Source of the DNA: Octopus bimaculoides
Taxonomy: Eukaryota
DNA: 64,000 nt
Direction of reading: 5' to 3'
NCBI RefSeq assembly: GCF_001194135.2
Contig: NC_068991.1
Span: 8,752,930-8,816,929 of the forward strand
Below are positions 8,290 to 50,478 of this stretch, piece by piece; positions within the stretch are counted from its first letter, which is position 1, and each line of letters begins with the position of its first letter. The notes under the pieces were generated by a model. The model was not told the DNA's origin. It did not search any database and was given only the letters and a program-made list of their open reading frames with translations. The position numbers and the translations under genes are program-made.

Positions 8290-10580
8290 TTTACATGAAG
8301 CGGGAATAAAACTGGCTGCAGTATGTAACAACGTCCGACCGAAGTGAGTAGACGATACCGGTAACAACAGTTTGTTAATACCGGAAAGGCAACCTACGTA
8401 ATTTTAAAGCTATTGCGATTTTCGTCTAAATCAGTTCAATTTCTCCACCTATCCACAATCTTGAAGATTATTAGTAGGGATTCTACTCCGTGAAATTCCT
8501 TTATTTAATGAGGAATTCATAAATTTTCCAACTTATAAAGGAATCTTCACACTGAGTGAATGTAAGCCGGCATGCCAAAAAAATGGAAAACCGCTGGCAA
8601 AGACGTGTAATGATTTTTAGTGCAACCATGTTTTCACACACAAAAACAATAGGAAACCTTGGAACAGCCATCCGCAATATTAAGATAACATCGATACTTA
8701 TCGATATTAGGAGATATTTTGACCTCTTCTATAGTATCGACTCGATGTTTAAAAGGTGTCGTTTGGCCGTTCAAAAGTCTGAGTAATCTTTATGAGATGT
8801 GTTTTGCTTGATTGACGAAATTTTGGTTTGCACTTTGAACTTAATTTACACAGAGGAATCACTCGTTGGTCATTCTCGACGGAGTATGGCATGTTTTTAA
8901 ATGTAATGAAGTGATGCAAGTTGACCCCAAGTGGTACAAAACATTGTGAAGTTTAGCTATGGATCTGTGATCACGAAATGTCGTCTTGGAAATACGATCT
9001 GGGAAACGCCTTGGTAGGAATATAATGTCTCGCTTGTAACAGAATAATTTCTTTCTCCAACACAAAACATTGTCATTCTTTATTCTATGCCACTTATCAA
9101 ATACGTAGCTTACAGAACATTGGCCAGTGAAATGCCTACATGTCATAGAGTGACGTCAAGGCCATTTCGTTTCAATAATAGCTTTTTTTTCTACTCCTTG
9201 AAATGCTTATAAAGAAGAAAGCTTATAGACAGTCTCTTGGGTTGAAATCGACTAAAACAGCAACGCTTAGCGCATCTGCCTCAATTTTCAGTGGTATAAA
9301 CTTATCGTCAGCTTTTACTATCGATTCTTCAGTATCCTTCTTGAGTATACGGAACGATGTTTCTGTCTTTAGAAACTAACTTGTAATACTCAAAGGACGA
9401 ATAAACACATATGCATTGAATATATAATATATATTCTTTCAGAATAATAGGATAAAAGGCCAACATTTTTGCAAAGTAACTTAATATTCTAAGGAACAAT
9501 AGCTCTCATGGAGGTTGGAGTCGGTTAGGATTTGGATGCATCTCGGTTTTCAACTACATAACCAAGGACGTTCAGTTTTTCAGCCGAAAACGTACATTTA
9601 CCCTCGCTGTAATAATTATTCCTTCGTTTTGTAGCCGTAATGAACATTTGAGATATTATATAGATTGCTGTCCAAGTATGCAAAAGTTCCAACTAGTTTT
9701 TCTTCCTAGATAACTAAAATTCATAATACACAAGAAACAAATCACTATTTGTCACCTCAAAAGGCGACTCCAGCAAATTGTAAAAGCTTCTTCAGGCTTT
9801 GGATGCAGTGTATTGCTGATCGTCATTTCTCATTGAAACTTAGTGGAAGCCCAACGTAAATCAAGCAACATTATTCATTAAGATTCTCGTCAAGAACTGA
9901 AAATGTTTCGTTTTTTATAACCTGTACATGTCAAGAGGATTTACAGGGCTGAATTAATACTTCCCTTAGCAATTGTTGAATTTCTTTTTCTATAATTTTG
10001 CGGCCAACGTATAAAGCACTAAAATCCAGAAATAGCAAGGGAAGGCAGATCTCCTTCATAAGCCAGCATTACACCATCATGAAACCCCTGAAAGCCCTGG
10101 CCAAGAGTAAAGTCAGAAGGTTAAGATTGGCAAACCTTAAAATTCTGTTTTACAGTAAATGCTGATGGATCAACAATAATTCCAAATCCCTGATAAAACA
10201 ATGTCGAACTGACTTTCACAGCGTAGAGCAGTGGTCACAAACTGAAAGTTTCAATCTTTTTCATGAAGTCGTTAGGGTTTCCATATATTCTTTTAACGAC
10301 TCTCCGATCTGCTGCCACAGAAGTGTAAGAAGAGCGTGCAAAAATTTCATTCTGAGTTTTATGTATAGTTTGTGAAGCACTTACGGACGTTTTCAAAAGT
10401 TATATATTCTATGATAATTTCGTATCTCTGAAGACTCAACGTTTATGAGACGAAACTCATTTAAACTGACTTGAAGTAAAACTAACAAAAATTTCGAAAG
10501 TTTTATGATCAGACGTTGCTGAGCTGGAATCGACATTGAGCTGTTCATCTCAAGTCAAAGCAGACGATCTATTATGAAGT
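8290..10580 (-). mobile_element. Degenerate, internally deleted Ty3/Gypsy LTR retrotransposon (gag-PR-RT-RNaseH-IN order)
   Basis: Minus-strand motifs in order: gag NEIFAR..QQIGESLKEY (~10350-10290); protease C-terminus LGQGFQGFHDGVMLAYEGDLPSL (~10120-10040); RT IEKEIQQLLRE..PCKSS, TFAYLD, KCTFSAEKLNVLGYVV (~10000-9540); RNase H FRILKKDTEES, FDKWHRIKND (~9360-9050); integrase KLHNVLYHLG, CKPKF, FGMPAYIHS (~8960-8300). Many stops and frameshifts. Confidence 0.85.
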
Positions 10581-12409
10581 GAGTGGCTTACATAACGTAG
10601 TCAGTTTCTGATCACGATAAGTGCAGTATGGTTGAATAGTGTTTATGTTACAATAGAAACCTTATCTGAAGGTTTTATCCAACATAAAATTGCATGTAAC
10701 AATGTAACACTTATTCGATAGCTTAAACAGTATACAATTGACTATATTCAACAGATAAAACTGAGTAAACCTTGTTCATTCTCATGAACAACTTCCTCTC
10801 TTACCAAGATAGTCGAAACGCTAGGTAATAGAGGAAGGGCAAAAGGCGAATATAGCCTCCCTTTTATTGTTTGAGTCAGTTCAGTCATTTTAATATTTAA
10901 GAATTCGCGTTTGCAACAAGGAATTCACTGCTGCGATCTATGTAGCTTACAGTAAATGAATTTCTCAAATCATCTTGTATACACTATAAATAAGTTGTAA
11001 GCTTCCAATCTTCTCTCTCTGGATAAAATGGGAGTATTCTTTCTCTTACCGATCTGTGTATGGGTAGAATGTAAGTGTTCTTTCTCTCAAGAACGTCAAA
11101 CAAGAATGGAAATAAGCAGATCAATCTCTTCCTTCCTTCATTACAAAGAGGTAAAATCTGTGATGTAACTAGTTTACTTTTGAGAGCTAAAACTGTATGA
11201 TTATTTTAAGTTCCAAAATTATCGCGTTTCGTTTGTATGTAGGTTTTACTTAACACTGTTTATAACTCGACTTATTGACATCCTGGTTATATGTGCATAC
11301 ACAAACACTAAACAGATTTGAATAAGATACACACAGACTAGAAATAATTGGTTTGAACGGATTTTGTACATCTACGAAATATGTAATACACGAACAGACT
11401 ATATTTATATAATAGTTAACTTATACACATGCATTACATTAATAGGATACATAAATAGACCCCCCTCCCTAGTAACAACAGCAGTTAAATAATAATTTAC
11501 TGAGATCGTCATTTCACGGTTAGTGAACAACGGAAACTGAGTCAGAGGACATGACTTTTTCTCCCCATCTACAACCCGTGCCCCAAATTAACATCAGACA
11601 AGTCATTTAGTCAGATTTTTTAGCACACTACTTCCGCCTCTGCTCAAAATAACTGCTAAAATGATTGTTTCTAATTTAGGCACAAGGCCAAAAATTTGAG
11701 GGGAGGGGAAAGTGGCTACTATCGATCTCAGTAGTTGACTCGTACTTTATTTTATTGGAAACTGAAAGAAGCTTGTCGTGTGTGTGTGTATGTGTTTATC
11801 TTTGTGTCTGTGTTAGTCTCTCATCACTGCTTGACAACTGGTATGGTTGTGCTTAGCGGTTCGGCTAAAGAACCGATAAAATAAGCACCAGGCTTTCAGG
11901 ATTAAAAAACTAAGTACTAGGGTCGATTCATTCGGCTAAAACCCTTCAAGGCAGTACCCCAGTATGGCCACAGTCTAACGACTTAAGCAAAAGATAATGT
12001 TATTTCCAGTTACATTTTTCTTGTGAACTAAGTATTTTTGGCTGGGAAATTGAATCGCCTTTTTTTTTTCTCTCCATATTTTCTGTCCATAAAAATGTGT
12101 TTATTTGTGCTTAAGATTTTTCTGGGTGGGGTAGGAAAGAGAGAGGGGCAGGTGCAGGACTAGAAATTCGACGGAGTGGTTTGTGGATTAAATTGACCCC
12201 AGCACGACATGCTTTGTGCTTCTTTCATCCACTTTGGAAGGATAGAGGGCAAAGTTGACCTCAGTCGGATTTGAACTCAAAATGGTAACTACATAATTGC
12301 AGGGTATTTTGTCCAGCATAGTACCAATTCTACCAATCCAGAATCATGAATAATGATGGTGGTGATGATACAGATGCAAAACAGAAGGGGTATCTTTGCT
12401 TCACTTAAC

Positions 12410-12557: not shown

Positions 12558-13316
12558 GTTTTTGAATGAGCTATTTTCTGGCAGAGCAGAATATTATCTG
12601 GCAGATAGACGGACATTAGGGGACAGGCAGACAGAGAAATAGGTCTGGCAATAAGAGACAGACAGGCAATAAGAGACTGGCAGATAGACAAGTAGATAAT
12701 AAATGACTAACAATAAGAAACAGATAGACAGACAGACAGACAGTAAGAGACTTAAAGACAACCAATAATAGTCATGTAAACAGAAAATAAGAGACACAGA
12801 GACAGGTTGACAGACAATAAGATGGCAGCCAGTCAGCCAACTTGAAGAGACAGAAACAAGAAAAGAGAAAAAAAGTGAGAGACACAAATATTGGATGTAA
12901 AAATCCTGCTGAGAAATGATACTAAGATGCCACACCTTGTACTGAGAAAACTGTAAGAGAAATCAAGACAAGATAAGGAAATATTTATTTGCCAAAAATT
13001 ATAAACAAGCATTTGAGAATACCCTCATATGCAAAATTATATCAAGATAAGAAAATGAAGAGAAGAGAAAGTGTGCATCTTGGAAAGAAAGGCCAGAGAC
13101 TGTATTTTGTAGGTGTTGACATAGATAACGTATTTGATGATTGCAGACACATACACACACATGCACATATACACACATGCACATACACACACATAAAGAA
13201 ATACACATAGAGACACACTGAGGCACATACAGCAATGCACATGTACACATATATTTACTGATACACATACATTGGAACTCCCATCACTGTCATGACTAAT
13301 CTAAAATGATTCTGAG

Positions 13317-16869: not shown

Positions 16870-18342
16870 TAATGGGATAGTTACAGCTGAATGCTCTACA
16901 TTATAAGATTGCTTGATCAGGGTTGATTTGAGGCTAAATAACGGACAAAAGAAATGGTATTTTGTTCATTTGAAATATTTTTATATTTCCAAGTTATGGG
17001 GTTACTGCACAAACCTGTTAACCTTCACTGACTGACTGTCATCATGAAAAGCTGGATGTCACAATTTGCTACAGCCTTATCCTCCCCTTCTGTGTCATTT
17101 TATTTGGCTTTTGTTCCTTCTTCCCTTCTTGTTCAAGTTACTGCTTGTTCACTTCCAACAGCTCAGTCTTTCAATATGACCTCTGTTCAATCTATGTATC
17201 TTTTTTTTTTTTTTTTTTTTTTTTNNNNNNNNNNNNNNNNNNNNNNNNNNNNNNNNNNNNNNNNNNNNNNNNNNNNNNNNNNNNNNNNNNNNNNNNNNNN
17301 NNNNNNNNNNNNNNNNNNNNNNNNNNNNNNNNNNNNNNNNNNNNNNNNNNNNNNNNNNNNNNNNNNNNNNNNNNNNNNNNNNNNNNNNNNNNNNNNNNNN
17401 NNNNNNNNNNNNNNNNNNNNNNNNNNNNNNNNNNNNNNNNNNNNNNNNNNNNNNNNNNNNNNNNNNNNNNNNNNNNNNNNNNNNNNNNNNNNNNNNNNNN
17501 NNNNNNNNNNNNNNNNNNNNNNNNNNNNNNNNNNNNNNNNNNNNNNNNNNNNNNNNNNNNNNNNNNNNNNNNNNNNNNNNNNNNNNNNNNNNNNNNNNNN
17601 NNNNNNNNNNNNNNNNNNNNNNNNNNNNNNNNNNNNNNNNNNNNNNNNNNNNNNNNNNNNNNNNNNNNNNNNNNNNNNNNNNNNNNNNNNNNNNNNNNNN
17701 NNNNNNNNNNNNNNNNNNNNNNNNNNNNNNNNNNNNNNNNNNNNNNNNNNNNNNNNNNNNNNNNNNNNNNNNNNNNNNNNNNNNNNNNNNNNNNNNNNNN
17801 NNNNNNNNNNNNNNNNNNNNNNNNNNNNNNNNNNNNNNNNNNNNNNNNNNNNNNNNNNNNNNNNNNNNNNNNNNNNNNNNNNNNNNNNNNNNNNNNNNNN
17901 NNNNNNNNNNNNNNNNNNNNNNNNNNNNNNNNNNNNNNNNNNNNNNNNNNNNNNNNNNNNNNNNNNNNNNNNNNNNNNNNNNNNNNNNNNNNNNNACATA
18001 AAGACACAGGAAATGTGTCAAGGCCGACAGGAAGCGGTGCAGCTTCCTAGGTCTAACCAACAGTAGTATTATTCCCTTCAGGGGACTGTCACATTAAGTT
18101 GACAGCATACAACTATTTCATCATCATCATTGTTTTAAAATCTACTTTTCTATGCTTGTGTCAGCTGGACAGAGTTTATTGCAGCAGATTTTCTACAGCT
18201 GGGTGCCCTTCCTGTTGCCAACCCTTACCTGTTTCCAAGCAAAGTAAAATTTTGCTATGGTTAGACACATTTTAGCAGAATATTGGAAATGAATGACGTT
18301 CATTTACGACAATCATGTAATGTCAAAACAAGGAGACACAGG

Positions 18343-23805: not shown

Positions 23806-25190
23806 TAATGTGCAAGTTTTATTTTATACGAATTATGAAGCAGGGATCTCAGTAGACTACTTGAGTTTTGTAAATACGTCCAGAAAACCCATTATATAAA
23901 CGTTTGCTTCCAGATCTACAATATTTGGAAGATATTGAATATCTGTCTGGAAAACATCACATCCATTTTTTATTTTTTCGTCATGCACATCACACTAAGC
24001 AAATGAGAATTGTGACCACACAGACCATTGTTGTCCAGTAAACTCATCAGCATTTTTATTGAAATTTCAAGGTAAATTTAAATAAACATCACGAGGTGTT
24101 TTATGCTGTTCTGTAGAAATTCAGAGGAATTAGCAGTGAATATTTTCAGGTGAAAAAAAGTTTTGTATGATGTGACGTACATTACACTTTTTAGATCAAA
24201 ACGAAAATACTTGCCTGGGTAGTCAAAATTTACTGTGGAAAATCAATCAATGCAATACTTAAAAATCTACAGCTTGGATATTCTTAATTTGAGCCTGTCA
24301 TGTACGTTACGTGAGAAATGGCCCTTTGTAAAATTTTCTGAGCCTGGGTTTGCACCTCCTAAGCAAATTTTGTTCCTGAGCCAGTGATCACGTGATGTCT
24401 AGACCTTTAGCTTTCGGATTACTCTGTCAAATGTGATGCTTATTCACAATGTTTTGAATGACTCGTACATTATCTCAAAGCTTCAAGATTCAAATGATGT
24501 AATTGTTTATATTTAGGATGACATTGTAGGGTAGGTGTGAGAGGCTGGATCTGACCAATTCAAACATAGAACAAATAGAAAATTTGGGTCAGATATGGTC
24601 ACTTTAAATACTAAAGGACTAGATAAGAGCCCCCCCCCCACACACACATATATACATAGCAAGCTTCTTACAGTTTCCATCAATCAAATCCACTGACCCC
24701 AAGAAAATAAGCTTGGAAAGCAAACTTCTCAACCACACAACCATACTGGCATCTTCATTTGGTAATACATTAATTAATTATATCTGATTATCCTCTATAT
24801 GGCAACAAGTAGTTTTCTGTTTGCAGTTAGCTAGATCAGGTTATCAAAGCCTTCTAAATGAAATTTGGTTGTGTGTTGAAGGCCGCCAGAAGGACCGTTC
24901 CAGTTCCCGTTCTCAGGTGCAATGCTTGGCTTTTGTCTTTTTGGTGTCTACTCTGTTGCAAGCATTCAGGGGATCTGATCTGAGGATAACACCCTCCTTT
25001 CTTCCTGCAATCTCAAAGAGCCCTCGAGGGGTAAATCATGGGTGGTGCTATTCTTCCTTTAACTAAGCCATTTAAATAAAATAAAAGCCATTAAAGTACA
25101 AAGTTACATGTTTTAACCATGAACACAATTGTGGAGCATTGGGCACTCCAGCTAAACCAACAGGAACCAACCTTTTAACAACTCTACTTA

Positions 25191-25450
25191 TTCCACAAGT
25201 ATCCACCACAATTAGAGCTCAGCACTTCTTTGCGCAGCTGTCCTCATCCATACGCATCACATGACCGAACCAGCGCAGCATGTGCAAGAGAGAAGACTGC
25301 TCCGGTTTGGTCGTGTGATGCATATGGATGAGGACAGCTGTGCAAAGAAATGCTGAGCTCTAATTGTGGAGAGTACCTGTGGAAGGGGTAGACCCAGGAA
25401 GGCATGGGATGAAATGGTGAGAAAGGATCTTTGGATAAAGGGCCTCACCA
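25191..25450. mobile_element. RTE-clade LINE 3' ORF fragment plus an inverted partial copy (fold-back)
   Basis: Plus strand reads QERRLLRFGRVMHMDEDSCAKKC.ALIVESTCGRGRPRKAWDEMVRKDL, an RTE C-terminal motif. 25191-25278 is the reverse complement of 25297-25384 with scattered substitutions. Confidence 0.8.
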
Positions 25451-26112: not shown

Positions 26113-28604
26113 ACACATATACACAGACACACATATGCATACACATATATAGACACATACATATACAGGTATACATACATATAAATAATTAACTATATAC
26201 ATATCCTATATATTCCATCTGAAGTCCAATCCTGCAGTAAAGAAAAGGGTAAAGACATCCTTTGGTCATAAATGATCATAGAATTGCACCTAGAAAGTTG
26301 TCCTTTGAGGCACAAGTCTGGGCAAGGATGTTTGTGGAAGATCAGCAGTCGCCCGTGCATACCAGCCTCCTCTCTCCATGCCACAGATGTTCTCCAAGGG
26401 AATGGCAAAGGCTGATACAACTTGGCACCAGTGATGTCACAACTCGTTTCAACAGCGGAGTTAACTGGCGCAACATAAAATAAAGTGTCTTGCTCAAGAA
26501 CACAACACAGCCTGGTCCAGGAATCGAACTCACTACCTCATGATTGTGAGCCTGATGCTCTAACGACTGAGCCACATGTCTTCTACAGTGTCAAACACCT
26601 AAAAAGGTTAGAAATAGGTTATAATATGAAAAAAAAAATATGCTTCCTTCATGAACCCTCAATCATAACATTATACTAGGGAGTTAGTCTGTGAGCCTGA
26701 TGTCATTACCTTGACTATGGGGCAAGAAATCTCACTAAAACATATTCCTGTTTTAAGCCAATAATGGAGAGACAGAGAGGAAGGGAATGTGGTATTAGAA
26801 CTGACAAGAGACTTTCAAGCTAATGAGGACTCCCTTATGCAGTTGCTTGAATTGCTAGAAACAGCAACCAAATCTCTCTCAAATCATACCCTACTTTTTT
26901 TTATAAAGGTAAGGCACCATATTAGATATGTATCATTGTCTAGACGTCATGGGATGGTTTATAAATGAGTATCGTCATCATATAAGTGAGGTTGTTCATT
27001 TCCAGTCTTCCATGAAAAATATGCTCAGCAATGGGAAAATATTAACTTGCTTGAAATAAGCGAAGGTTGATGACAAAAGAAGCATAGTAGCATAGAAATT
27101 CTGCCTCAATAAATTCTGTCTGACCCATGCAAGCATGGAAAAGCGAATGTTAAATGATTATGATGATGAATTGAAGACACACCATACTTGGGTATAATAC
27201 TGGACACTCCCAGACTCAATCTGAGCCATTAAGTCATCTCTGTCCAGTCCCTCTGGAGACACAGAGTGGAACTTTTGGCAAGTATGAAGAACTGCTCTCC
27301 AACAACTATGATAGTAGATGATGACTGCAGCAATTTGCTAGCTCAAGTCATCTTAGATTCCTTGCTGTTGAACCAAGATATTTCAAGTCCACAAAGAAAT
27401 TAGTGTAAAACATCATTTCTATGCTAAACAAAACCACACACTCAAGGAATTGTGGGGCCACCAACACCCTGCTTGAAAAAAGGTACCCCCCCCCCACCAA
27501 AAAAACCAGGTCTCAAAGATGCTTGGTCAAAGCTGGAACATTTTTGATCACAGTTCTACTTAATCAGGGTTTCAAAGTTAATTGACTTTGGACTAAACAA
27601 AATAGGTAATACATAATGAACTCCTAAATATTAAGGTAACGATATTCTTTCAAACTGAGAATGAAACAGTCAAAATACTGATTAAATGACTCTTCAACCA
27701 ATCAAGGAAGATTAAAGCTGTCTGAGGAATTGAGTGTTATGCAATTAAGACACTGAGATGAACGAAAACATCTGTAATCTCAATCACTCCATTTAATATA
27801 TATTACATGCCAGGAGTACAATTCAGTGCTTTGAGTTGTATCATGTAAAAAAAGATATGTCCTCAACTCTGGTTTCATAATGTGAAGTGTGTGATAGATA
27901 AAGTTGGCTGAAATAATAGCTTACCACAAACCACATTCCCAGTGAACCTGGTATCTGTTTCCAACAAATCAATATGCTAGGGCACATAAAATACTCTTTC
28001 TCCACTCACCAGCAAAACACTTAGTCACTGCTCATAGCAGGAGCTAGTAAGATAAGTTTAAGTTTCAACATCAAGAAACCATAGGTCAAATGACTGACTA
28101 TGGTTTGCCAGGCTAATGCATCGTCAGATATGAAGTCAGAGTTTAGTCCTGCAGTTTTACTAAAACTTCAAACATTTTTCCAACCTTTCCTGTAAGCAGA
28201 AGAATATAACTGATAAGTGTTCCAAAGGCTTGTAATCTTGCATTAGTAAATAAAACAGAGGCATTTATTACCAGCTCAGAATAGACTGGTTCCCTCAAAG
28301 GAAATAGTCTTCTTCACTGGGTTTAGTGTGTCTAGCAGATTTAATCAAGGTGATACATGGCTACTCTTGTTGGAAGAGATAAACAGCAAAGATGGTAGAA
28401 AAGATGTGATGGAGAGTACCTTCAAGTATGTGTCAGGGCCATACTGTCTTAAAAAAAAAAAAAAGAAGATACATTGTATAACATAGTCCTAGATACACTA
28501 TGTCTGAAAGGACAAAAGGATTTTCATAGTTGGAAATTTTTTGATCGTAGGCTGTTTTGACCAGGATTTGAGTTTAAACAAGAGACAGAGAAAGCACATC
28601 TTAA

Positions 28605-37604: not shown

Positions 37605-38483
37605 TTAAGGGTACACGTGTCTGTGGAATGCTCAGCCACTTGCACTTTAATTTCACGAGCAGGCTGTTGTTCTGTTGATCGAATCAACTGGAATCCTTGT
37701 CATCGTAACCAATGTAGTACCAGTCCTGTTCAGTGGTTGATGGCATCAACGACAGCTTCTCCTCCAAATTGCTGGCATTGTGTTTAAATCAGAAACTATA
37801 ACTGAGGCATTCAACAGAGAATTAGTGGTGGATTAAAAGTAATAATGCTGTCAGGGAAACTCAGAGCATCAATGAAAATCAGCTGGTTAGTCCGTTCTGG
37901 AGAAGCTTTGGACCAGGTTCCTTGGATAATTTCCAGCAATCCTAGGCCTGGTAGAAGCTATTTGGAGGGAGGGGGCATTATTGGTTTGAGATAAACGCTA
38001 CAGACATGGAGGTGTCATCAGTAGAGCTCATCTGAGGTGTGCACAGAGTGATAACACTGTTCTACAAGAATTCATCTGGTGCCCTAGCCTTGCTGAAATC
38101 TGGAGTTGTGTCAAACACCTGTTGTCATATGTAGAATGGATCCAGCTGTCAGCTGAGTTCATAGTGAAGATTATTCTGCCGCCTTCCTTTGGTTGGTAAG
38201 AGCAGCTGGTCTTTATCTGTCAGGTGGCTTTGGTGAAAGAGGTTGTGTAATGTGTGAGATTAAAAGAGCTCAAAATAAACATCTTCCTCCTTGCCCAAGG
38301 AGGAAAATGTGTGTGTGTGTGTGTGTTTGTTATTGTCTCCTTACTTTAACTTTGTGTGACAGTTGTAAACGAGTGCCTCTGTCATACAAGTGGTGTCTTC
38401 AGTTTCCAACTGTTCAGGAAAACATGGCTTGTCATGGGAGAGAATTACCTTACCATGCCAGCATGAAAAATGTATACTAAAGA

Positions 38484-43200: not shown

Positions 43201-43844
43201 CTGCTAGTTTTTTTTTATTGACCACTTTATCAGTTCATGGTGTAGGGTATGTGTTGTGTAGGTTGAGAAGAGAGAAAAAGGTTGTGAGGAAGAGAGAGAG
43301 AGAGAGAGAGAGAAAGAGGAAGGGAGAGAGAAAGAGGAAGGGAGAGAGATAAGTAAAAGAACTGAAGAAATATTTGTTAGAAAGAAAATCATTGCAAGGG
43401 AAATATTATTTGAAATGTATTTTCTTTGCAACTGGCACAGAGAAAATGGTTAGTTTGGCTGACTACAAAGAAAAACAGAAATTTCTTGATGTTTTACAAA
43501 GAAATCTAAAAGCCAAATATGTCGTTATAGCCTAGACAGCGCCTAGAGGAACATGGCATTGATTTTGTGTAGATTATTGCTAGGTTTCCTTAGGTAACCA
43601 TTCTATATAGTTGTGTGTGTGTGTGTGTCAATGCATGATTGTGTATGTATGTGTGTGGATATGTATGTATTTATGCATGTGTATGTACACATGTGTGTAC
43701 AAGTGTGTATGTAGGTTTGTATAAATGTATGTATGTATGTAACATAGTTATGTAGATTTGTATGAGTGTATGTGTATATATATATATATATGTATGAGTG
43801 TATATATGTATGTTGGTGTGTATATGTATATAGGAGTATGTATA

Positions 43845-43881
<37 letters not shown>

Positions 43882-45370
43882 GCAAATGCATATGTATGTA
43901 TCAGTAAATGTGTATGCAAAAATGTGTTTGTATGTATATATCTACATATGCATATATTTACGCATGCATACATATTTATACTCCAGTCAATCCAATAATC
44001 ATAGACGTTCCACCCACGGCCATCCCATCTCATCATTTATTCAGACACAGCATATCTAGAACTGCATTGTCTAAGGTGGCCTTCCTTTGTCTAGATGTTA
44101 GGTTACATTATGATGGAAATTTAGCAGCTATGTTTGGCAGGTCAAGCAACCACATACTGTTAACATTTATTGACTGTTGTTTGTCTTTAGGCCTAAGCTG
44201 GCTGTGACTCGGCAGACATATGATCAAATATTTGCCAACCATGACAAAACCAGCATAGTTTTTGAAGTCTCTGGTATACATGTTTCTAGGACTACATCAT
44301 AGAATGAATCATTTGTTTACTAAGATGGTAGAGCAAGAATATAATCATGTGAGTTACAAAGGGAAGTTTTTAACCAAACATCTTAGCCTGTATCCATAAT
44401 ACAACATGTATACACACACATGCACATGTGCGCGCGCACACACACACACACACTCTCTTTCAGCGTCCATTTACCAAACCTATTCACAAGTCTTTGATCA
44501 AACTGGGATTATAGTAGAAGAGACTTGCTTAAGGTTCCATACAATGGGAGTGAAGCCAGAACCATTTAGATGGGAAACAAAATTCTTAACAACATAACTA
44601 CAGGCAAAACTGTAAATTAAATAGTTCCACCATTTTATGTGTGTTTCATTAACAAAGAATGATGATCAGTGATATAATGATATAATATAAATTATATAAA
44701 TAAACTACATTGTCTAATCTTCAGAGATGCATAACACTCTTTTGTAATTTTACTGCAATTTTACTGAATTCCAACCAAATGATACATGGTCTATATGAAT
44801 CCTCCTCTTGGTTTCCATCCAGAAATACACAAATATATATAGAGTTCTAAGAGATGGTAATGTGTCTTTTCTGGCAATTCAACTTTTAGCATTTAAGCCG
44901 ACCATATTGGGCCCAAATATTCTACATGTTTTGTGTTCAATCTGGCCAGATCTGGACTCTCACATCTACTTTACAATGACATTCTAAAAATATACAGTCA
45001 TATCATCAAAATTTTGAAGCTATGAAATAAAGCATGATTAATCCGAAACAATATGACTAAAGAAGAATTACATTTGACAGAGTAATTTGAATGTTAAAGG
45101 GTTAAATTTAAATTGCCCTATAAAAATGTGTGCATGTGTGTATGTATATATATATATATATATGTGTATTGTGTGTGCATATATATATATATATATTTAC
45201 ATATACATACAAAGACACACATACAAACACATACATATCCCTCATGTAAACTGTGTGCCTTAAATCTCATTAACCACCATCCCCCTCCACCACCACCACC
45301 ACTGTTCATTTACCGAGCAGTCCACCTCCTTCGCTGCTAACCGCATGCTTACCTGCTTGCTTTTTTCCAG

Positions 45371-45531
45371 CCGCAGACTGCTACGAACTTGGTAGAATCG
45401 CTTATCATGATGATGACTTCTACCACACTGTACTGTGGATGGACGAAGCGTTGCTGCGTTATGATAAGGAAACGGTTAAGACAATCAATAAAGATGCCTT
45501 ATTGGACTATTTGGCTTTTGCCACGTATAAG
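45371..45531 (+). CDS. P4HA: Prolyl 4-hydroxylase alpha subunit internal exon, variant A (peptide-substrate-binding/TPR region)
   Basis: Acceptor ttttttccag|CC, donor AAG|gtatgt, 161 nt, phase 1 to 0. Reads xADCYELGRIAYHDDDFYHTVLWMDEALLRYDKETVKTINKDALLDYLAFATYK, matching the recalled P4HA motif AEDCFELGKVAY..DYYHTELWMEQAL...LDYLSYAVYQ. Not shown in this frame in the ORF track. Confidence 0.93.
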
Positions 45532-46598
45532 GTATGTGATGCTGTGTGCTTGTCTGAGATTGGGTGGTGGTAATGGTGGTAGTCGTGGTAGGGATAGTTG
45601 TGTGTGTCTNNNNNNNNNNNNNNNNNNNNNNNNNNNNNNNNNNNNNTGTGTGTGTGTGTGTGTGTGGTTGGATTGCTTTGAGGAATGGTGATAATGGGTT
45701 TGTGGTAAGGCTGGATGTGGTGTTCGTGAATGAAACCTTGTTGGCTGTCCGATATTGTCGTGAATTTATGTGTGTGTGTGTGTGTGTGTGGGGTGGAGGG
45801 GATTGCTTAGAGGAATAGCAATCATGGTTTTACAGCATGGTTGGATGCATTGGTGAATGGTACCTTGTTGGCTGTTTGAGTTAATCACGAATTTGTATGC
45901 GTGTGTGTGTGTGTGTGTAGATGTGACTGTGTGGTTAAGAAGTTGGCTTCCTAAGCACATGGTTTTAGATTTAGTCCCGCAGTGTGACACTTTGGGCAAG
46001 TGTCTTCTACTATAACCCCATGCCAACCAAAGCCTTGTAAGTAGATTTAAACAGAAACTGAAAGAAGCCCACCATATATACGTGTGTGTATGTGTGCATG
46101 TGTTACTGTGTTTTAGCCTTAACATCACATGACGGTTGTAAATGAATGCCACTGTCATGCAGAATGTTTTCTTTTGTTTCCAATCTTCCATGAAACCACG
46201 TCTGGTCATGAGGAACTACTACCTCATTTGGAAACAGGAAGGGCATCCAGCTGTAATAATTCAGCCTCAACAAATTCTGCCGAATGTAAACAGTAAAACA
46301 ATGATGATGATGATGATGATGATCATGAGGACCTGGTGTATGCAATTAAGACAGTATTTAATTAAAATAGCCATCTATGTATCCTACTTAATGTATATAC
46401 ACAGTTGATGGACCATTTACTGCTGTATTTGTCCTGACATAACATCTGTTATGGATTTTTGCTGTGCTTGAAACATATTAAATATAATAGATAATGAATT
46501 CACTCATCTGAGTATGTGGTTGGTTGCAAGTCTGTGCCATTGAAAAGGCTCAAAAAGGCCAAAATACTCCCGCCACTCACACCGGACATTGCTTAGAT

Positions 46599-46853
46599 CA
46601 GTGTTTCTCAACCATTTTTTGCCTATGGGCCCCTTTGGTCCCTACTTTACTCAGACGCACCCTCATCGCCATTTGATGTTTAAAAATATCCTATTATATT
46701 TTCATAATTAAATATTGCTAGAAATTGTATAAAAAAAATTGTTAAAATATTTCATGTATTGCAGAAGTATAAACAATTTATGGTGGATAAATTTTAACAA
46801 GAAAATTTTATAGAGACCTCCAAAGCCACATGGACCCTGGTTGAGAACCACCA
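46599..46853. mobile_element. hAT (Charlie-like) MITE
   Basis: CAGTGTTTCTCAAC...GTTGAGAACCAC termini, with a degenerate 8-bp TSD gcttagat / gaatagat. Confidence 0.6.
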
Positions 46854-47063
46854 GAATAGATGATGAATTTTCATCTCTCTCTCATATTTATTGCATTTTT
46901 AATGCAGCAAGTCTCCAAGAAATATTATCTGAGAACAAACACTGCAGTAATGGCCTATTGAAAATATGTGTACACAGATTGTAGGACCAAACATTTTTTT
47001 CTTTTAAATGTTGAGGTCAACAATGGTGGTGATGGTGATATTAGATAAATAACAATTGTGATG

Positions 47064-47340
47064 TTAATGGCTGTTTATAGCAATGGCGATGATGGTGGTG
47101 GTGGTGGTGGTGGTGGTGTGAGGTGACTGATGATCTTGATGACAATGATGATGATGATGGTGGTGGTTGTAGGTTGTAGGAGTTGCTGGTGGTGGAAAAG
47201 ATGATGATGATGATGGTGGTGGTTGTGTGATGGTGATAAGGTTGGTGTTGGTGATGATGGTGGTGAAGATAATAACAACAATGATGATTATAATAACAGT
47301 GCTGCTGATGTCTGATGATAACACTGGTGATACTAGGATG
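47064..47340. repeat. (GGT)n/(GAT)n low-complexity tract
   Basis: Mixed ggt/gat trinucleotide runs. Confidence 0.9.
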
Positions 47341-48636
47341 ACAACTCCAACAGTGTGCATTTCATTTTTTTGTTCTTTCCATAATCCATAACAAGAAAAA
47401 AACCCTTGAAATCCTTTGCACACATCCATCTGTATGTTCCCATATCAAAGCATATCTCCAACTAACCCCTTAACTTTAATAACCTTTGTGTTTTGTTTTA
47501 TGTACATATTCTCATGCATAATAGTTGCGTTTCTAGACATGCGCATATATACTTAAATGCTAAACTCCTGGAAAGTTTTACAAATTTTTACAGTTCCAGT
47601 GATGGCTTGGAACTGGTGCCCTCAAATAAGCTTTGTGTGTGTGTGTGTGTGTGCGTGTGTGCGTAGTAATGTGTAAACACACTTTAATTACAAAATCTTT
47701 GAGGACAGAAAATGAGAGATCATCTGAACCAGTGTTGGAGTTTCATTGTCAACTGAGTACCCTCTTTAACTACCCCTGGAAATACTGCATATAAATGTTG
47801 TTACCGAGAACTTATTAGTGAATTAATAATACTTGTGGGTTAATAACAGCGGATTTGTAAGCAGTGTTAATTAATAACTATTAAGATAATAATTTGCCAC
47901 ACTATTAACCTCTATACAGATAGAAAATACATAAAAATATAGCAGGGCATCTATTCATACATTTATGCATATATATGCCAACCATATATATACATATGTG
48001 GCCTTCCTTTCTAAAGGCAGTTGTGCAAGAATTGAAGCAGATTTTGCTATTTCTAGCTTTTTTAAAACAACCATGTAGAGGTCTCTCACATTGTTGTTGT
48101 AGGTATTATTGCTGTTGTTAACTGAAATCAACTTGATCAAATATACTATCAGCCCTATTTTTAAATATATCTAGTATCAAAGACCTTCCAACTATAACCA
48201 TCACATCCCATTTTTTCCAGACATAGTGTATCTAGGACTACATTATCCATTGTGTTCTTTGAGCTTTATAAAATTTTTATTCCTTTAATTTTAGTACAGT
48301 AGGATGTCTGACCTAAGAGAGGAGATTTCTCAGATATTTCTAGTTTGTTGAATCACAAGATAGAGAAGTTCCTTGATTGGCTTATTTATAATTATTGCTG
48401 ATGTCATGTGATCTCATTAGTTGTATGGTAATGGTGCATGGAACTTGTATGCAAACTAATTCATACCTTAGTGCTTGCTCATATATATACATATATATTT
48501 ATCTCTTGTCCTTAGATTGAACCGTTTATCATGACAATAACAGCTAAATTGAACCCACCAACTAACACTTCTTACCTCCCTCGATAGTGCCTCTTTCTCA
48601 CTCAGTTTTGGGAGTCATTTTGGCAAACTGCATTAA

Positions 48637-48837
48637 CCCTTTAGTATTCAGATCCTGTCAAATGTAACGCTTATTTATTCAGTGTTTAGAATTAATCATG
48701 CATTATCTTGTAGCTTTGTGACTGTTTATTTTTAGAATGACATTGCAAGGTTGGTGTGAGGGGCCAAATTTGGTCAGCTTGAACATAAAACAGGTAGAAC
48801 ATTGTGGCCAATTATGGCTAGTTTAAATGCTAAAGGG
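48637..48837. mobile_element. piggyBac-type MITE (family 2); further copies near 18740-19020, 24400-24620, 44885-45105 and 54500-54720
   Basis: TTAA|CCCTTTAG...CTAAAGGG|TTAA, with a shared internal sequence (ttgaattaatcatgcattatc...tttagaatgacattg...gaacataaaacagg). Confidence 0.75.
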
Positions 48838-49220
48838 TTAAAACAAGCATGGATTTTTGTTCTTTTATTGTAGTTTAGTGAAGCCAATTAATATCTTCTA
48901 ACTGTTTTAAGTGCACAATGCTCTGAGCTGGGTCATAAACAGAGTCTGCTGACTAACATTTTCCACTACTCTTGAAACTGTCTCCCTTCTTCATCCCTAA
49001 CCCTTACTCACTCAGTTCTAGGAATCTTTTTGGCAAACTTTGTTACACAAGCATGGACTTTTGCTCTTCTGCATGTCCTTACAATAAGAATCTAATTCTG
49101 CCAATGTCTTTTATTCTTTAACTGTTTTATATTTACCATGTTGCAAATCCTGCATCATGGTGAAAAAATACATTTTGCTGTTGTTTAGTGACACCAATTG
49201 AAATTCTTTAACTGTTTTAG

Positions 49221-49381
49221 CTGAAGAATGCTTTGAGCTAGGACGCTATGCCTATACCCAACGTGACTTCTACCATACTATTATGTGGATGCAGGAATCT
49301 CTGGATCAGGATGCAAGGGAATTGAATAAAACAGCCGATCGAGCACTCATTCTTGATTATTTATCCTATGCCATGTCAATG
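49221..49381 (+). CDS. P4HA: Prolyl 4-hydroxylase alpha subunit internal exon, variant B (homolog of 45371-45531)
   Basis: Acceptor aactgttttag|CT, donor ATG|gtaaga, 161 nt, phase 1 to 0. Reads xEECFELGRYAYTQRDFYHTIMWMQESLDQDARELNKTADRALILDYLSYAMSM; 24/53 aa identical to variant A. Confidence 0.93.
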
Positions 49382-50084
49382 GTAAGAATGCATAAAACAA
49401 AACTTTCTTATATATACCCTAGCAGAAAGGCATTAATGCCTTGCATTCTCGGTTTGCCTTTATAAATCTGTGCTCTTTGTGCATGAACAAGGACAACTTA
49501 TGTTATTCATTATGGCCACCTTTATGTACCCTCTACATATCCCTCTCTTCCTCACCTACACCTTGAAAATTAAACCCCTACTTTCTGATCTATCCTCCTT
49601 CTTGAGCTTCTCCTGTCTCTCTTATACCCTCTCCATGCTGGTATTTCCCATCGACCACACCTCCACCCTTCCCCATCTCTAACCATCTGTTACTCTTCAC
49701 ACTCATCTGAAGTTACCCATTCTCTCCTTTCTACCCCTGATCTGTCTCCCATTTTGTGCTCACCTTCTTGTGCCTTAAGGGTTTACTCTGGCACCCATCT
49801 CTGACATTTTTACCTTCAACTTCCCCAATTACTATTACTCATCATTATATAATGTTGGGTAGACATGTATCTCTTCTATAGCAAGACACCTGTCCTTGTT
49901 CCTTTGTCATATTTTAGCCTCTCCATACCTGGCATAAATCCACCTCCCCTTCCCTAACACTGCTCCCCACCCACTTCTACTTAGTCATAGAGTGGGGGTG
50001 AAGGAGCTTTTCCCTTTTCCATTCTTCTGCCTTGCAATCTTGTTAGTGCCAGTGCACAGCACAAAAAAAAAAACTAAAAATAAA

Positions 50085-50478
50085 GGCGCAGGAGTGGCTG
50101 TGTGGTAAGTAGTTTGCTTACCAACCACATGGTTCCGGGTTCAGTCCCACTGCGTGGCACCTTGGGCAAGTGTCTTCTACTATAGCCTCGGGCCGACCAA
50201 AGCCTTGTGAGTGGATTTGGCAGGCGGAAACTGAAAGAAGCCCGTTGTATATATATTTATATATATATATGTATGTATATGTTTGTGTGTCTGTGTTTGT
50301 CCCCCCAACATCGCTTGACAACCGATGTTGGTGTGTTTACGTCCCCGTCACTTAGCGGTTCGGCCTGGGAGACCGTTAGAATAAGTACTAGGCTTACAAA
50401 GAATAAGTCCTGGGGTCGATTTTCTCGACTAAAGGCAGTGCTCCAGCATGGCCGCAGTCAAATGACTGAAACAAATAA
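50085..50478 (+). mobile_element. SINE family A, full length, young copy
   Basis: ggcgcaggagtggctgtgtgg...gactgaaacaaataaaa, with CpGs largely retained. Confidence 0.88.

What the first reader, a model, noticed from the sequence alone, without database searches (positions are those of the whole stretch)
45371..49381. Duplicated, probably mutually exclusive exons swapping the peptide-substrate-binding surface of collagen prolyl 4-hydroxylase
Seen: two homologous exons, both exactly 161 nt and phase 1 to 0, with canonical splice sites, intact frames and 24/53 (45%) aa identity. They are 3689 bp apart with no other P4HA exon between them (only a 37-nt gap). Joining A to B reads B out of frame (CTG AAG AAT GCT TTG AGC TAG), and skipping both also frameshifts, so only one-of-two inclusion keeps the frame. 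Established (recalled): this segment is the TPR-like peptide-substrate-binding domain, carrying human P4HA1 Tyr158, Asp192, Tyr193 and Tyr196, and the vertebrate mutually exclusive exons I recall (P4HA1 9/10, P4HA2 12a/b) lie in the catalytic domain instead. Variant A has LDYLAF (Phe at the Tyr196-equivalent) and acidic HDDD; variant B has LDYLSY and TQRD. Inference: one gene makes two isoenzymes with different collagen or proline-rich substrate preference, achieving by splicing what vertebrates do with paralogs. I do not know whether this is already described.
Basis: partly seen in the sequence, partly recalled or inferred. Interest (0 to 1): 0.88.

Follow-up and report, generated by a model that had tools for sequence, protein, structure and literature searches.

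The report
Alternative exon pair in octopus prolyl hydroxylase
An octopus collagen prolyl 4-hydroxylase gene carries two old, interchangeable copies of one exon, only one of which is spliced in, and they change two residues in the groove that grips collagen; databases already list both protein forms for sister species, but I found no paper on it.

Summary
Exon A (45371-45531) and exon B (49221-49381) are both 161 nt with AG/GT splice sites. They are 24/53 aa and 59% nt identical. Both match the peptide-substrate-binding (PSB) domain of collagen prolyl 4-hydroxylase alpha (Pfam TPR_P4H, E about 1e-19 to 1e-20; human P4HA1 PSB structures, E about 1e-13 to 1e-15). The N gap (45610-45646) lies in the intron, 79 nt past exon A's donor, so it affects no reading frame.

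Octopus sinensis XP_029649805.1 and XP_029649806.1 differ only in this 53-aa segment: one carries B, the other A. The same two proteins were annotated in O. vulgaris by a transcript-based pipeline. The same ordered pair sits in one gene in Argonauta, Sepia, a bivalve and a gastropod. Two annelids have a single copy, and the arthropod isoforms sampled never differ here. Both exons are under purifying selection (dN/dS 0.03-0.14).

Across the molluscs, the 5' copy keeps Phe196/Tyr199. Different substrate preference remains an inference.

This is a new example of a familiar mechanism. It is already in sequence databases, but I found no paper describing it.

The parts
45371..45531 (+). Exon A, the 5' copy. 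161 nt, enters in phase 1 and leaves in phase 0. Encodes (A)ADCYELGRIAYHDDDFYHTVLWMDEALLRYDKETVKTINKDALLDYLAFATYK, equivalent to human P4HA1 residues about 148-200 (helices H7-H9 of the PSB domain). Groove residues are Tyr158, Asp192, Tyr193, Phe196 and Tyr199.
   Evidence: sequence, AG/GT, frame. (TPR_P4H 73.9 bits). (human PSB structures, E 5e-15). (93% identical to O. sinensis isoform P0273 across the exon; 52/53 within it). (dN/dS 0.03-0.14 against Argonauta and Sepia).
49221..49381 (+). Exon B, the 3' copy. 161 nt, same phases. Encodes (A)EECFELGRYAYTQRDFYHTIMWMQESLDQDARELNKTADRALILDYLSYAMSM. Groove residues are Tyr158, Asp192, Tyr193, Tyr196 and Ser at position 199.
   Evidence: (TPR_P4H 68.5 bits). 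(E 1e-13). (98% identical to O. sinensis P0227). (orthologue in Logan contigs L001/L002: 51/53 aa, 5 synonymous-type against 3 non-synonymous base changes)..
45532..49220 (+). Intron between the two alternative exons (3689 nt as assembled). It has a U2-type GT...AG and is full of microsatellites and dispersed repeats. It contains no other P4HA exon.
   Evidence: no further homology. (against Argonauta, only about 40 nt upstream of each exon is conserved).
45610..45646 (.). Assembly gap (37 N, length estimated), inside a (TG)n / ~128-nt tandem repeat, 79 nt downstream of exon A's donor site. It is intronic.
   Evidence: (repeat families D6 and D7 directly after the gap).
48863..48932 (+). Decayed partial extra copy of exon B's acceptor region plus its first ~22 nt (77% identical to 49173-49242). 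The acceptor is spoiled (TTTTAAG), the reading frame decays (..AQCSELGHKQ..) and then stops. It is not a usable exon.
   Evidence: family D5; D9, D12 and D14 show the same local duplication. (translations).
44878..45105 (.). Left arm of an inverted repeat whose right arm is at 48633-48841, so the two arms bracket exon A. Both arms are copies of a dispersed repeat, and the pair is not conserved in Argonauta. It could loop out exon A in the pre-mRNA, but this is only a possibility.
   Evidence: I1, I6, I12, I20; 123-nt core, 79% complementary. (five copies of the element in the window, about 74% identical; no hit in Argonauta locus L003).
48633..48841 (.). Right arm of the same inverted repeat, 380-590 nt upstream of exon B.

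Best explanation
The window lies inside a very long (about 105-109 kb in sister species) single-copy-looking gene for the alpha subunit of collagen prolyl 4-hydroxylase in an octopod. The octopod is close to, but not identical with, Octopus sinensis/vulgaris. The two 161-nt exons are an old tandem duplicate that is spliced in a mutually exclusive way. Each mRNA takes A or B between the same upstream exon (...GGVKTQELT) and the same downstream exon (QGNAHLAL...).

Exclusivity is enforced at least by the reading frame. 161 is not a multiple of three, so A+B gives a TAG seven codons into B, and skipping both also shifts the frame. Such transcripts would be non-productive and probably removed by nonsense-mediated decay (inferred).

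The exon encodes helices H7-H9 of the TPR-like PSB domain. That is five of the roughly ten side chains that form the P8 and P5 proline pockets. Tyr158, Asp192 and Tyr193 (P8 pocket) are kept in both copies. The copies differ at 196 (Phe in A, Tyr in B) and 199 (Tyr in A, Ser in B). Arg223, Asn227, Tyr230 and Phe231 come from the shared downstream exons.

I infer that the switch leaves the P8 pocket intact and remodels the P5 pocket and the Tyr196 stacking site. This would give two isoenzymes with different affinity or register for proline-rich (X-Y-Gly)n peptides. B appears to be the commoner form.

The duplication predates the split of cephalopods, bivalves and gastropods.

Shown: anatomy, homology, frame logic, conservation, purifying selection, annotated isoforms.
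Inferred: NMD, the biochemical difference, which form predominates, and how the choice is regulated.
For: 1. Anatomy and frames.
2. Domain identity: Pfam TPR_P4H for each exon peptide; P4Ha_N + TPR_P4H + 2OG-FeII_Oxy_3 for the full orthologues; human P4HA1/P4HA2 PSB crystal structures.
3. One gene, one-of-two use:
- O. sinensis isoforms P0227 (B) and P0273 (A) are identical outside the segment, and the same proteins occur in O. vulgaris.
- O. vulgaris alternative forms were derived by PASA from Iso-Seq and RNA-seq (PMC10700109).
- The gene range is 105-109 kb.
- mRNA-sized Logan contigs from Sepia-like samples carry upstream-B-downstream joined (P0278-P0281).
4. Same architecture elsewhere, always with canonical AG/GT, length = 2 mod 3, and between the same flanking exons:
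- Argonauta L003 37793-37953 / 43753-43913.
- Sepia pharaonis L006 25105-25265 / 28143-28303.
- Tegillarca L004 11713-11873 / 12820-12983.
- Biomphalaria L005 10292-10479 / 11007-11167.
5. Selection: dN/dS is 0.13, 0.03 and 0.14 for A; 0.04 and 0.10 for B; dS is saturated. Against Argonauta, only the exons and about 40 nt of upstream intron are conserved.
6. Class-wide signature (alignment):
- 5' copies have F196, Y199 and K200 in all five molluscs.
- 3' copies have a non-aromatic residue at 199 in all five, and Y196 and M200 in four of five.
- Octopus A is closer to Tegillarca copy 1 and B to copy 2.
7. Role of these residues: P8 pocket = Tyr158, Asp192, Tyr193, Tyr196, Arg223; P5 pocket = Tyr196, Tyr199, Asn227, Tyr230, Phe231. 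Y193A, Y196A and Y230A raise the Km for (PPG)10 (PMC12433258).
Against: - No RNA reads were examined for the species of the window. A-containing transcripts are known to me only through two annotations of sister species.
- All four Logan transcripts and both Sepia models, and the single Argonauta model, carry B. A may therefore be rare or tissue-restricted.
- The flanking constitutive exons are not in the window, so 'same gene' rests on orthologous loci and proteins.
- The neighbour-joining tree of 53-residue segments has weak support for cross-class orthology.
- Biomphalaria copy 1 is divergent (9-aa insertion) and is not the reciprocal best match of octopus A.
- Sepia B has Phe, not Tyr, at 196, so only the 199 difference is universal.
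- No binding or activity data exist for either variant.
- No conserved intronic RNA structure that could choose between the exons was found.
Confidence: 0.85

Rival explanations
1. Only one of the two exons (B) is really used. Exon A is a leftover of an old duplication that annotation pipelines occasionally pick up from splicing noise.
For: Every transcript-derived protein I could inspect directly (Logan P0278-P0281) and the Sepia and Argonauta gene models carry B. Exon A evolves faster than B in Argonauta (34/53 against 48/53 identical).
Against: Exon A keeps an open frame, its exact length of 161 nt, AG/GT sites and the pocket residues in Octopus, Argonauta and Sepia. dN/dS is 0.03-0.14 while synonymous sites are saturated and the surrounding intron is unalignable. 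A 5' copy with the same F196/Y199/K200 signature persists in a bivalve and a gastropod. Two independent annotations list an A isoform, one of them built from Iso-Seq and RNA-seq assemblies.
Confidence: 0.07
2. The two exons belong to two separate tandem P4HA paralogues, or one of them to a gene fragment.
For: The flanking exons are not visible in this window, so the window alone cannot exclude it.
Against: A complete paralogue would need about ten more exons between A and B, and none is there. In Argonauta, Sepia, Tegillarca and Biomphalaria the pair sits between one upstream and one downstream exon of a single gene. The O. sinensis isoforms share every other residue.
Confidence: 0.01
3. The pair is an assembly artefact (haplotig or collapsed/misjoined sequence around the gap).
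For: The assembly is gap-rich (12 N runs), and one gap lies 79 nt from exon A.
Against: The copies are only 59% identical in DNA, far below allelic divergence. The same pair is present in five other independently assembled species.
Confidence: 0.01
4. The exons are truly alternative, but the two proteins are biochemically equivalent. The duplication would be kept because it allows separate regulation (tissue- or stage-specific exon choice, or expression control through unproductive splicing), not because the binding groove differs.
For: [quoted passage not shown] The P8-pocket residues are identical in A and B.
Against: 29 of 53 residues differ, yet each copy is strongly conserved within cephalopods. 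The differences at groove positions 196 and 199 are class-wide across molluscs, which is hard to explain without selection on the protein.
Confidence: 0.25

Closest known systems
Vertebrate P4HA1 mutually exclusive exons 9a/9b (also called 9/10). Equivalent exons are reported in Caenorhabditis (PMC8373072; PMC11868403).
   Same: It is the same gene family and the same mechanism: two adjacent homologous exons from a tandem duplication, with exactly one included. It is ancient, and both copies are conserved.
   Different: It is a different exon and a different domain. The vertebrate pair encodes the ...RATVHDPETGKLTTAQYRVSK segment at the start of the catalytic region. The equivalent exon (LNRATVQNSVTGKLETATYRISK) is outside this window. 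It is single-copy in the Argonauta and Sepia loci and duplicated in Tegillarca. The pair studied here changes the peptide-substrate-binding groove instead.
Vertebrate C-P4H isoenzymes I and II (paralogues P4HA1 / P4HA2) with different PSB-domain specificities (PMC12433258)
   Same: The catalytic machinery stays the same while the PSB groove varies. A single aromatic pocket residue is present in one form and absent in the other (Tyr233 in PSB-I, Gln in PSB-II), and this changes affinity for (PPG)n and poly-Pro.
   Different: In vertebrates the difference comes from gene duplication, concerns the P1 pocket (residue 233) and has been measured. Here it comes from exon choice within one gene and concerns positions 196 and 199 (P5 pocket), and no binding data exist. 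In the octopus protein, position 233 is Arg in both forms (sequence, my alignment).
Tandem-duplicated mutually exclusive exons whose exclusivity is enforced by reading-frame incompatibility and NMD (a general class; reviewed in PMC9013439, PMC5740500)
   Same: The two exons have equal length that is not divisible by three, and equal phases. Double inclusion or double skipping gives a premature stop.
   Different: Nothing unusual. No sign of the other known enforcing mechanisms was found. The intron is U2-type GT-AG and not U12. It is far too long for steric hindrance (3689 nt). No conserved docking/selector RNA pairing was seen.

Membership tests
Collagen prolyl 4-hydroxylase alpha subunit (P4HA) | TPR-like peptide-substrate-binding domain (Pfam PF23558 TPR_P4H) | tested here: met
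   Each exon peptide alone scores 73.9 and 68.5 bits (cut-off 27), covering profile positions 1-54 of 91. Both match human P4HA1/P4HA2 PSB structures.
Collagen prolyl 4-hydroxylase alpha subunit (P4HA) | N-terminal dimerisation domain (P4Ha_N) and C-terminal 2OG-Fe(II) dioxygenase domain with the His-x-Asp...His iron ligands and the 2OG-binding Lys | tested here: met
   These domains are not in the window, since the exons lie outside it. They are met in the orthologous O. sinensis proteins that contain these exact exons: PF08336 and PF13640 hits. The motifs GGHYEPHFD, TRHAACPV and NKW are visible in P0227/P0273.
Collagen prolyl 4-hydroxylase alpha subunit (P4HA) | Conserved proline-pocket residues of the groove (Tyr158, Asp192, Tyr193, Tyr196, Tyr199; Arg223, Asn227, Tyr230, Phe231) | tested here: inconclusive
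   Both exons keep Tyr158, Asp192 and Tyr193. A has Phe196/Tyr199 and B has Tyr196/Ser199. Arg223, Asn227, Tyr230 and Phe231 are present in the shared downstream part of P0227 (my alignment to the numbering). The P8 pocket is therefore complete in both forms, and the P5 pocket is complete only in A.
Collagen prolyl 4-hydroxylase alpha subunit (P4HA) | Forms an alpha2-beta2 tetramer with PDI and hydroxylates Y-position prolines of X-Y-Gly repeats | not testable with these tools
   This needs expression and an enzyme assay.
Mutually exclusive exons from tandem exon duplication | Adjacent homologous exons of the same phase, with their own functional splice sites and no other exon of the gene between them | tested here: met
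   The same holds in four other mollusc loci.
Mutually exclusive exons from tandem exon duplication | Mature transcripts contain exactly one of the two | tested here: met
   Met indirectly and in sister species. O. sinensis XP_029649805.1/XP_029649806.1 and O. vulgaris CAI9739422.1/CAI9739423.1 differ only by A against B. The O. vulgaris isoforms come from PASA on Iso-Seq and RNA-seq. Raw reads for the species of the window were not examined.
Mutually exclusive exons from tandem exon duplication | Including both or neither is non-productive | tested here: met
   A+B gives a TAG at codon 7 of B. Skipping both gives a stop after 12 codons in the Argonauta locus.
Vertebrate P4HA1 exon 9a/9b pair (the known P4HA mutually exclusive exons) | Encodes the ...RATVHxPxTGxLxxAxYRxSK segment preceding the catalytic core | tested here: not met
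   The exons here align to human residues about 148-200 of the PSB domain. The exon-9 equivalent is a different exon, outside the window.
Mutually exclusive exons chosen by competing RNA structures (docking site / selector sequences) | Conserved intronic sequences complementary to one another next to each alternative exon | tested here: not met
   The only long complementary pair (44878-45105 / 48633-48841) consists of copies of a dispersed repeat and is absent from Argonauta. Between octopus and Argonauta, only about 40 nt upstream of each exon is conserved. Short selectors could have been missed.

The most novel reading that the evidence does not exclude
The exon pair may be a molluscan switch, at least Cambrian in age, that turns the P5 proline pocket of the substrate-binding groove on (Tyr199) or off (Ser/Leu/Ala199). 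A second cluster of two or three alternative exons in the catalytic domain (K-E-x-x-AF...GNRIATFL-Y; seen in O. sinensis isoforms X1/X3/X4 and in every mollusc locus examined) could combine with it. One gene would then produce a combinatorial set of C-P4H isoenzymes with distinct substrate preferences. [quoted passage not shown]
Probability: 0.35. Interest if true: 0.65.

Novelty: new member of a known kind. Interest (0 to 1): 0.45.

Why it matters
[quoted passage not shown] In vertebrates, specificity differences between isoenzymes are tied to single aromatic pocket residues. This gene has kept two versions of half the groove, probably for more than 500 million years. The two versions differ consistently at two pocket positions. 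That gives ready-made, evolution-tested variants for binding, structural and hydroxylation-pattern studies. It also raises the question of which collagens or other proline-rich proteins each form serves in molluscs. It is also of practical use for annotation. Several deposited mollusc gene models (Tegillarca KAJ8318338.1, Biomphalaria KAI8794049.1 / KAK7004431.1, UniParc UPI00078A0997) wrongly string both exons into one protein. The Argonauta and Sepia models omit the A form. The mechanism itself (tandem-duplicated, frame-incompatible alternative exons) is ordinary.

Tried and rejected
1. Two word-indexed protein searches with the bare 53-aa peptides found nothing. The index needs longer queries. 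A profile search of the representative library and a search with a probe alignment then worked. The probe alignment was a real metatranscriptome P4HA, P0016, with its PSB segment replaced by A or B, plus P0020 and P0042. The chimeras were search probes only.
I then used 24 database P4HAs, motif scans and the O. sinensis isoforms. None found any other P4HA exon in the window. The neighbours lie outside it or in gaps, which fits the gene length of about 105-109 kb.
3. The O. sinensis and O. vulgaris genomic DNA could not be fetched because the gene range exceeds 100 kb. The A isoform is not indexed because only one product per gene is on record.
4. I tested whether arthropod 'isoform X1/X2...' records hide the same switch. 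In ten clusters (Schistocerca, Bacillus, Periplaneta, Neodiprion, Thrips, Photinus, Amblyomma, Rhipicephalus and relatives, Anopheles, Rhynchophorus), no isoforms differ in this exon.
5. A neighbour-joining tree of the 53-residue segments separates 5' from 3' copies, but with weak bootstrap support. One support value near the root is an artefact of re-rooting. I rely instead on signature residues, exon order and reciprocal similarity.
6. I looked for an RNA-structure selector mechanism. Only repeat-derived inverted repeats were found, and they are not conserved.
7. The source species of P0001 (UPI00078A0997), which also carries both copies, could not be identified. It is about 46-50% identical to mollusc P4HAs and about 48% identical to a horseshoe-crab P4HA. 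Whether the pair exists outside molluscs therefore stays open.
8. Structure prediction was not run. It would return only confidence summaries, not pocket geometry, and the sequence matches to solved PSB structures already settle the fold.


Full report
**1. The observation**

The sequence is as described.
- Exon A (45371-45531) and exon B (49221-49381) are both 161 nt.
- Their splice sites are ...ttttttccag|CC...AAG|gtatgt and ...ctgttttag|CT...ATG|gtaaga.
- Each has one open frame, starting after two bases.
- The peptides share 24/53 residues. The DNA is 59% identical, with no excess identity at third positions, so the duplication is old.
- Flanking introns share only dispersed repeats.
- Joining A to B puts a TAG at the seventh codon of B.

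The N run flagged by the scan program (45610-45646) begins 79 nt after exon A's donor. It lies inside a (TG)n / ~128-nt tandem repeat, so it is intronic and no frame crosses it. Its true length does not affect the finding.

**2. What the exons encode**

- Each peptide alone passes Pfam's threshold for PF23558, the prolyl 4-hydroxylase peptide-substrate-binding domain (73.9 and 68.5 bits, cut-off 27).
- Each aligns end to end with the crystallised PSB domains of human P4HA1 and P4HA2 (E 5e-15 to 2e-11).
- From those alignments, exon residue n corresponds to human mature residue n+147. The exon therefore carries the equivalents of Tyr158, Asp192, Tyr193, Tyr196 and Tyr199.

According to PMC12433258:
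- The P8 pocket is formed by Tyr158, Asp192, Tyr193, Tyr196 and Arg223.
- The P5 pocket is formed by Tyr196, Tyr199, Asn227, Tyr230 and Phe231.
- Alanine substitutions of Tyr193, Tyr196 and Tyr230 raise the Km for (PPG)10.

Exon A has Y, D, Y, F, Y at these five positions.

**3. The rest of the gene is not in the window**

No other P4HA exon turned up anywhere in the 64 kb with any of these probes:
- a recalled human sequence used as a probe;
- 24 real P4HAs;
- motif scans;
- the octopus proteins themselves.

This fits the size of the gene, which spans about 109 kb in O. sinensis and about 105 kb in O. vulgaris. The window holds nothing else of note apart from repeats and 12 gaps.

**4. One gene, one exon at a time**

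A profile search and a word-indexed search retrieved cephalopod P4HAs. The 90% cluster of the Octopus protein contains five products.
- XP_029649805.1 (= O. vulgaris CAI9739422.1) reads ...KTQELTAEECFELGRY...SYAMSMQGNAH...
- XP_029649806.1 (= CAI9739423.1) reads ...KTQELTAADCYELGRI...AFATFKQGNAH...
- Everything else is identical.

The borders are exactly those predicted from the splice sites. The window's exons are 52/53 identical to each of these segments, so the window comes from a close relative, not from those two species. The O. vulgaris paper states that alternative forms were added by PASA from Iso-Seq and RNA-seq assemblies. The A form therefore has transcript support there, independent of NCBI's pipeline. 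mRNA-sized Logan contigs from Sepia-like samples show the upstream-B-downstream joins directly (P0278-P0281).

**5. Conservation**

I fetched six orthologous loci and mapped them.

| Species | Locus | 5' copy | 3' copy | Lengths (nt) |
|---|---|---|---|---|
| Argonauta hians | L003 | 37793-37953 | 43753-43913 | 161 / 161 |
| Sepia pharaonis | L006 | 25105-25265 | 28143-28303 | 161 / 161 |
| Tegillarca granosa (bivalve) | L004 | 11713-11873 | 12820-12983 | 161 / 164 |
| Biomphalaria glabrata (gastropod) | L005 | 10292-10479 | 11007-11167 | 188 / 161 |

- All eight exons have AG/GT sites and a length of 2 mod 3. In Argonauta and Tegillarca I mapped the pair between one upstream and one downstream exon.
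- In Argonauta, the upstream exon ends ...ACA G|gt and the downstream exon begins CAA GGC. Skipping both exons gives a stop after 12 codons.
- The annelids Lamellibrachia and Helobdella have a single copy.
- In ten arthropod clusters rich in annotated isoforms, none differs in this exon.
- Within cephalopods both exons are under purifying selection. dN/dS is 0.13, 0.03 and 0.14 for A, and 0.04 and 0.10 for B, with synonymous sites at or near saturation.
- Between the window and Argonauta, only the two exons and about 40 nt upstream of each can be aligned.

An unused exon would not keep its frame, length, splice sites and pocket residues over that distance.

**6. Are the copies orthologous across classes?**

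- Octopus A is more similar to Tegillarca copy 1 than to copy 2 (67.8 against 47.0 bits), and B more similar to copy 2 than to copy 1 (62.8 against 59.7 bits).
- In the alignment, all five 5' copies have Phe196, Tyr199 and Lys200, and Lys at position 40 of the exon.
- All five 3' copies have a non-aromatic residue at 199 (Ser, Ser, Ser, Leu, Ala) and Arg at position 40. Four of five have Tyr196 and Met200.
- GRI-AY against GRY-AY is shared between cephalopods and the bivalve.
- The neighbour-joining tree puts 5' copies and 3' copies in different halves, but with weak support. Biomphalaria copy 1 is aberrant.

I conclude, with moderate confidence, that a single duplication occurred before the cephalopod-bivalve-gastropod split. 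The 5' copy keeps the state seen in single-copy animals: arthropods have LAFSTY, annelids and human have L(A/S)Y..Y. The 3' copy has lost the aromatic residue at 199.

A UniParc model of unknown origin (P0001) shows the same arrangement, but I could not place it taxonomically.

**7. How it probably works**

- Shown: two competent exons, frame incompatibility of double inclusion and double skipping, and two annotated products.
- Inferred: aberrant combinations are removed by NMD.
- The intron between the exons is an ordinary U2-type GT-AG intron of 3.7 kb (0.5-5.8 kb in the other species). Neither U2/U12 incompatibility nor steric hindrance applies.
- I found no conserved complementary intronic elements. 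The only long inverted repeat brackets exon A (44878-45105 / 48633-48841), but it is made of two copies of a dispersed element and is absent from Argonauta. It might favour looping-out of exon A in this species, which is speculation.
- At the protein level, the switch replaces helices H7-H9 of the groove. Arg223, Asn227, Tyr230 and Phe231 come from shared exons (P0227 sequence). The P8 pocket is unchanged. The P5 pocket and the Tyr196 stacking platform change.
- By analogy with PSB-I and PSB-II, where presence or absence of Tyr233 changes affinity for (PPG)n and poly-Pro, I expect different peptide affinities or binding registers. This has not been tested.
- B looks like the major form: it is in four of five O. 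sinensis isoforms, all Logan transcripts, and the only Sepia and Argonauta models. This is also an inference.

**8. Comparison with what is known**

- The known P4HA mutually exclusive pair is P4HA1 exon 9a/9b. It has been traced to Caenorhabditis.
- It encodes a different segment, whose mollusc equivalent (LNRATVQNSVTGKLETATYRISK) lies outside the window.
- Four literature searches found no description of alternative exons in the PSB domain or of P4HA splicing in molluscs. The library does not hold most subscription-journal papers.
- The isoforms are, however, already in RefSeq and GenBank.

I therefore class this as a new member of a known kind. The mechanism is familiar and the sequences are already in databases, but the position is apparently undescribed and it touches an open question about the PSB domain.

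**9. Verdict**

- Observation: confirmed.
- Mutually exclusive splicing of one gene: well supported (about 0.85-0.9).
- Ancient molluscan origin: likely (about 0.7).
- Different substrate preference: plausible but untested (about 0.5).
- Interest: moderate.

Noticed in passing
Outside the window. O. sinensis isoforms P0227/P0274/P0276/P0275. L003 65978-66040, 73054-73116, 79781-79846. L006 44955-45017, 45722-45787. L004 28215-28274, 28815-28880. L005 16843-16902, 17396-17461. L007 21264-21326, 21464-21511.: The same gene has a second cluster of tandem homologous exons in the catalytic domain: KEEKNAFKRLGTGNRIATFLIY, KREIDAFDEMVGNRIATFLFY and KRKSTVLEQMVGNRIATFLFY. O. sinensis isoforms X1/X2, X3 and X4 use one each, and X5 skips it. 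There are three copies in Argonauta, two in Sepia, Tegillarca and Biomphalaria, and possibly two in the annelid Lamellibrachia. With the PSB pair this would allow combinatorial isoforms.
   Followed up: partly
L004 (Tegillarca granosa) 18033-18101 and 18198-18266: There are two adjacent homologous copies of the exon encoding L(K/D)RA(Q/T)VHN..TG.....YRISK. This is the exon that is mutually exclusive (9a/9b) in vertebrate P4HA1. The cephalopod, gastropod and annelid loci show one copy.
   Followed up: partly
window 48863-48932 (and 48593-48629 / 49003-49039, 48843-48864 / 49047-49068): A local duplication upstream of exon B left a decayed partial copy of exon B's acceptor and first ~22 nt. It has a spoiled AG and a broken frame, and is not a usable third exon.
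   Followed up: yes
window 44878-45105 and 48633-48841: Two copies of a dispersed repeat in opposite orientation bracket exon A (123-nt core, 79% complementary). There are five copies of the element in the window, and none at the Argonauta locus. The pair could form a pre-mRNA stem that loops out exon A in this species.
   Followed up: partly
GenBank/UniParc models P0215 (KAJ8318338.1), P0232/P0283/P0284/P0282 (Biomphalaria), P0001 (UPI00078A0997): These deposited gene models string both alternative exons into one protein, giving a duplicated half PSB domain with some translated intron between the copies. They are annotation errors caused by the exon pair.
   Followed up: yes
L003 37793-37953 (Argonauta) and L006 25105-25265 (Sepia pharaonis): An intact exon A is present in both, but it is not used in the deposited models (P0271, P0266/P0277 all carry B). 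The A isoform is missing from those annotations.
   Followed up: yes
L003 against the window: Exon A has diverged much more than exon B along the Argonauta lineage (34/53 against 48/53 identical to the window). Against the more distant Sepia the two are similar (42/53 and 40/53). This suggests relaxed or changed constraint on A in Argonauta.
   Followed up: no
L001, L002 (Logan SRR11869385, SRR11869391) against window 49027-50085: A related octopod (species not identifiable here) has exon B with 51/53 identical residues. Within the aligned 400-nt stretch, the ~120 nt upstream of the exon is nearly identical apart from two small indels, while downstream intron carries a 25-nt indel a few tens of nt past the donor; the whole contig matches the window at about 80%.
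   Followed up: partly
window 45647-45917: A ~128-nt unit ending in (TG)n is repeated in tandem directly after the assembly gap. The gap probably hides further units of this minisatellite.
   Followed up: no
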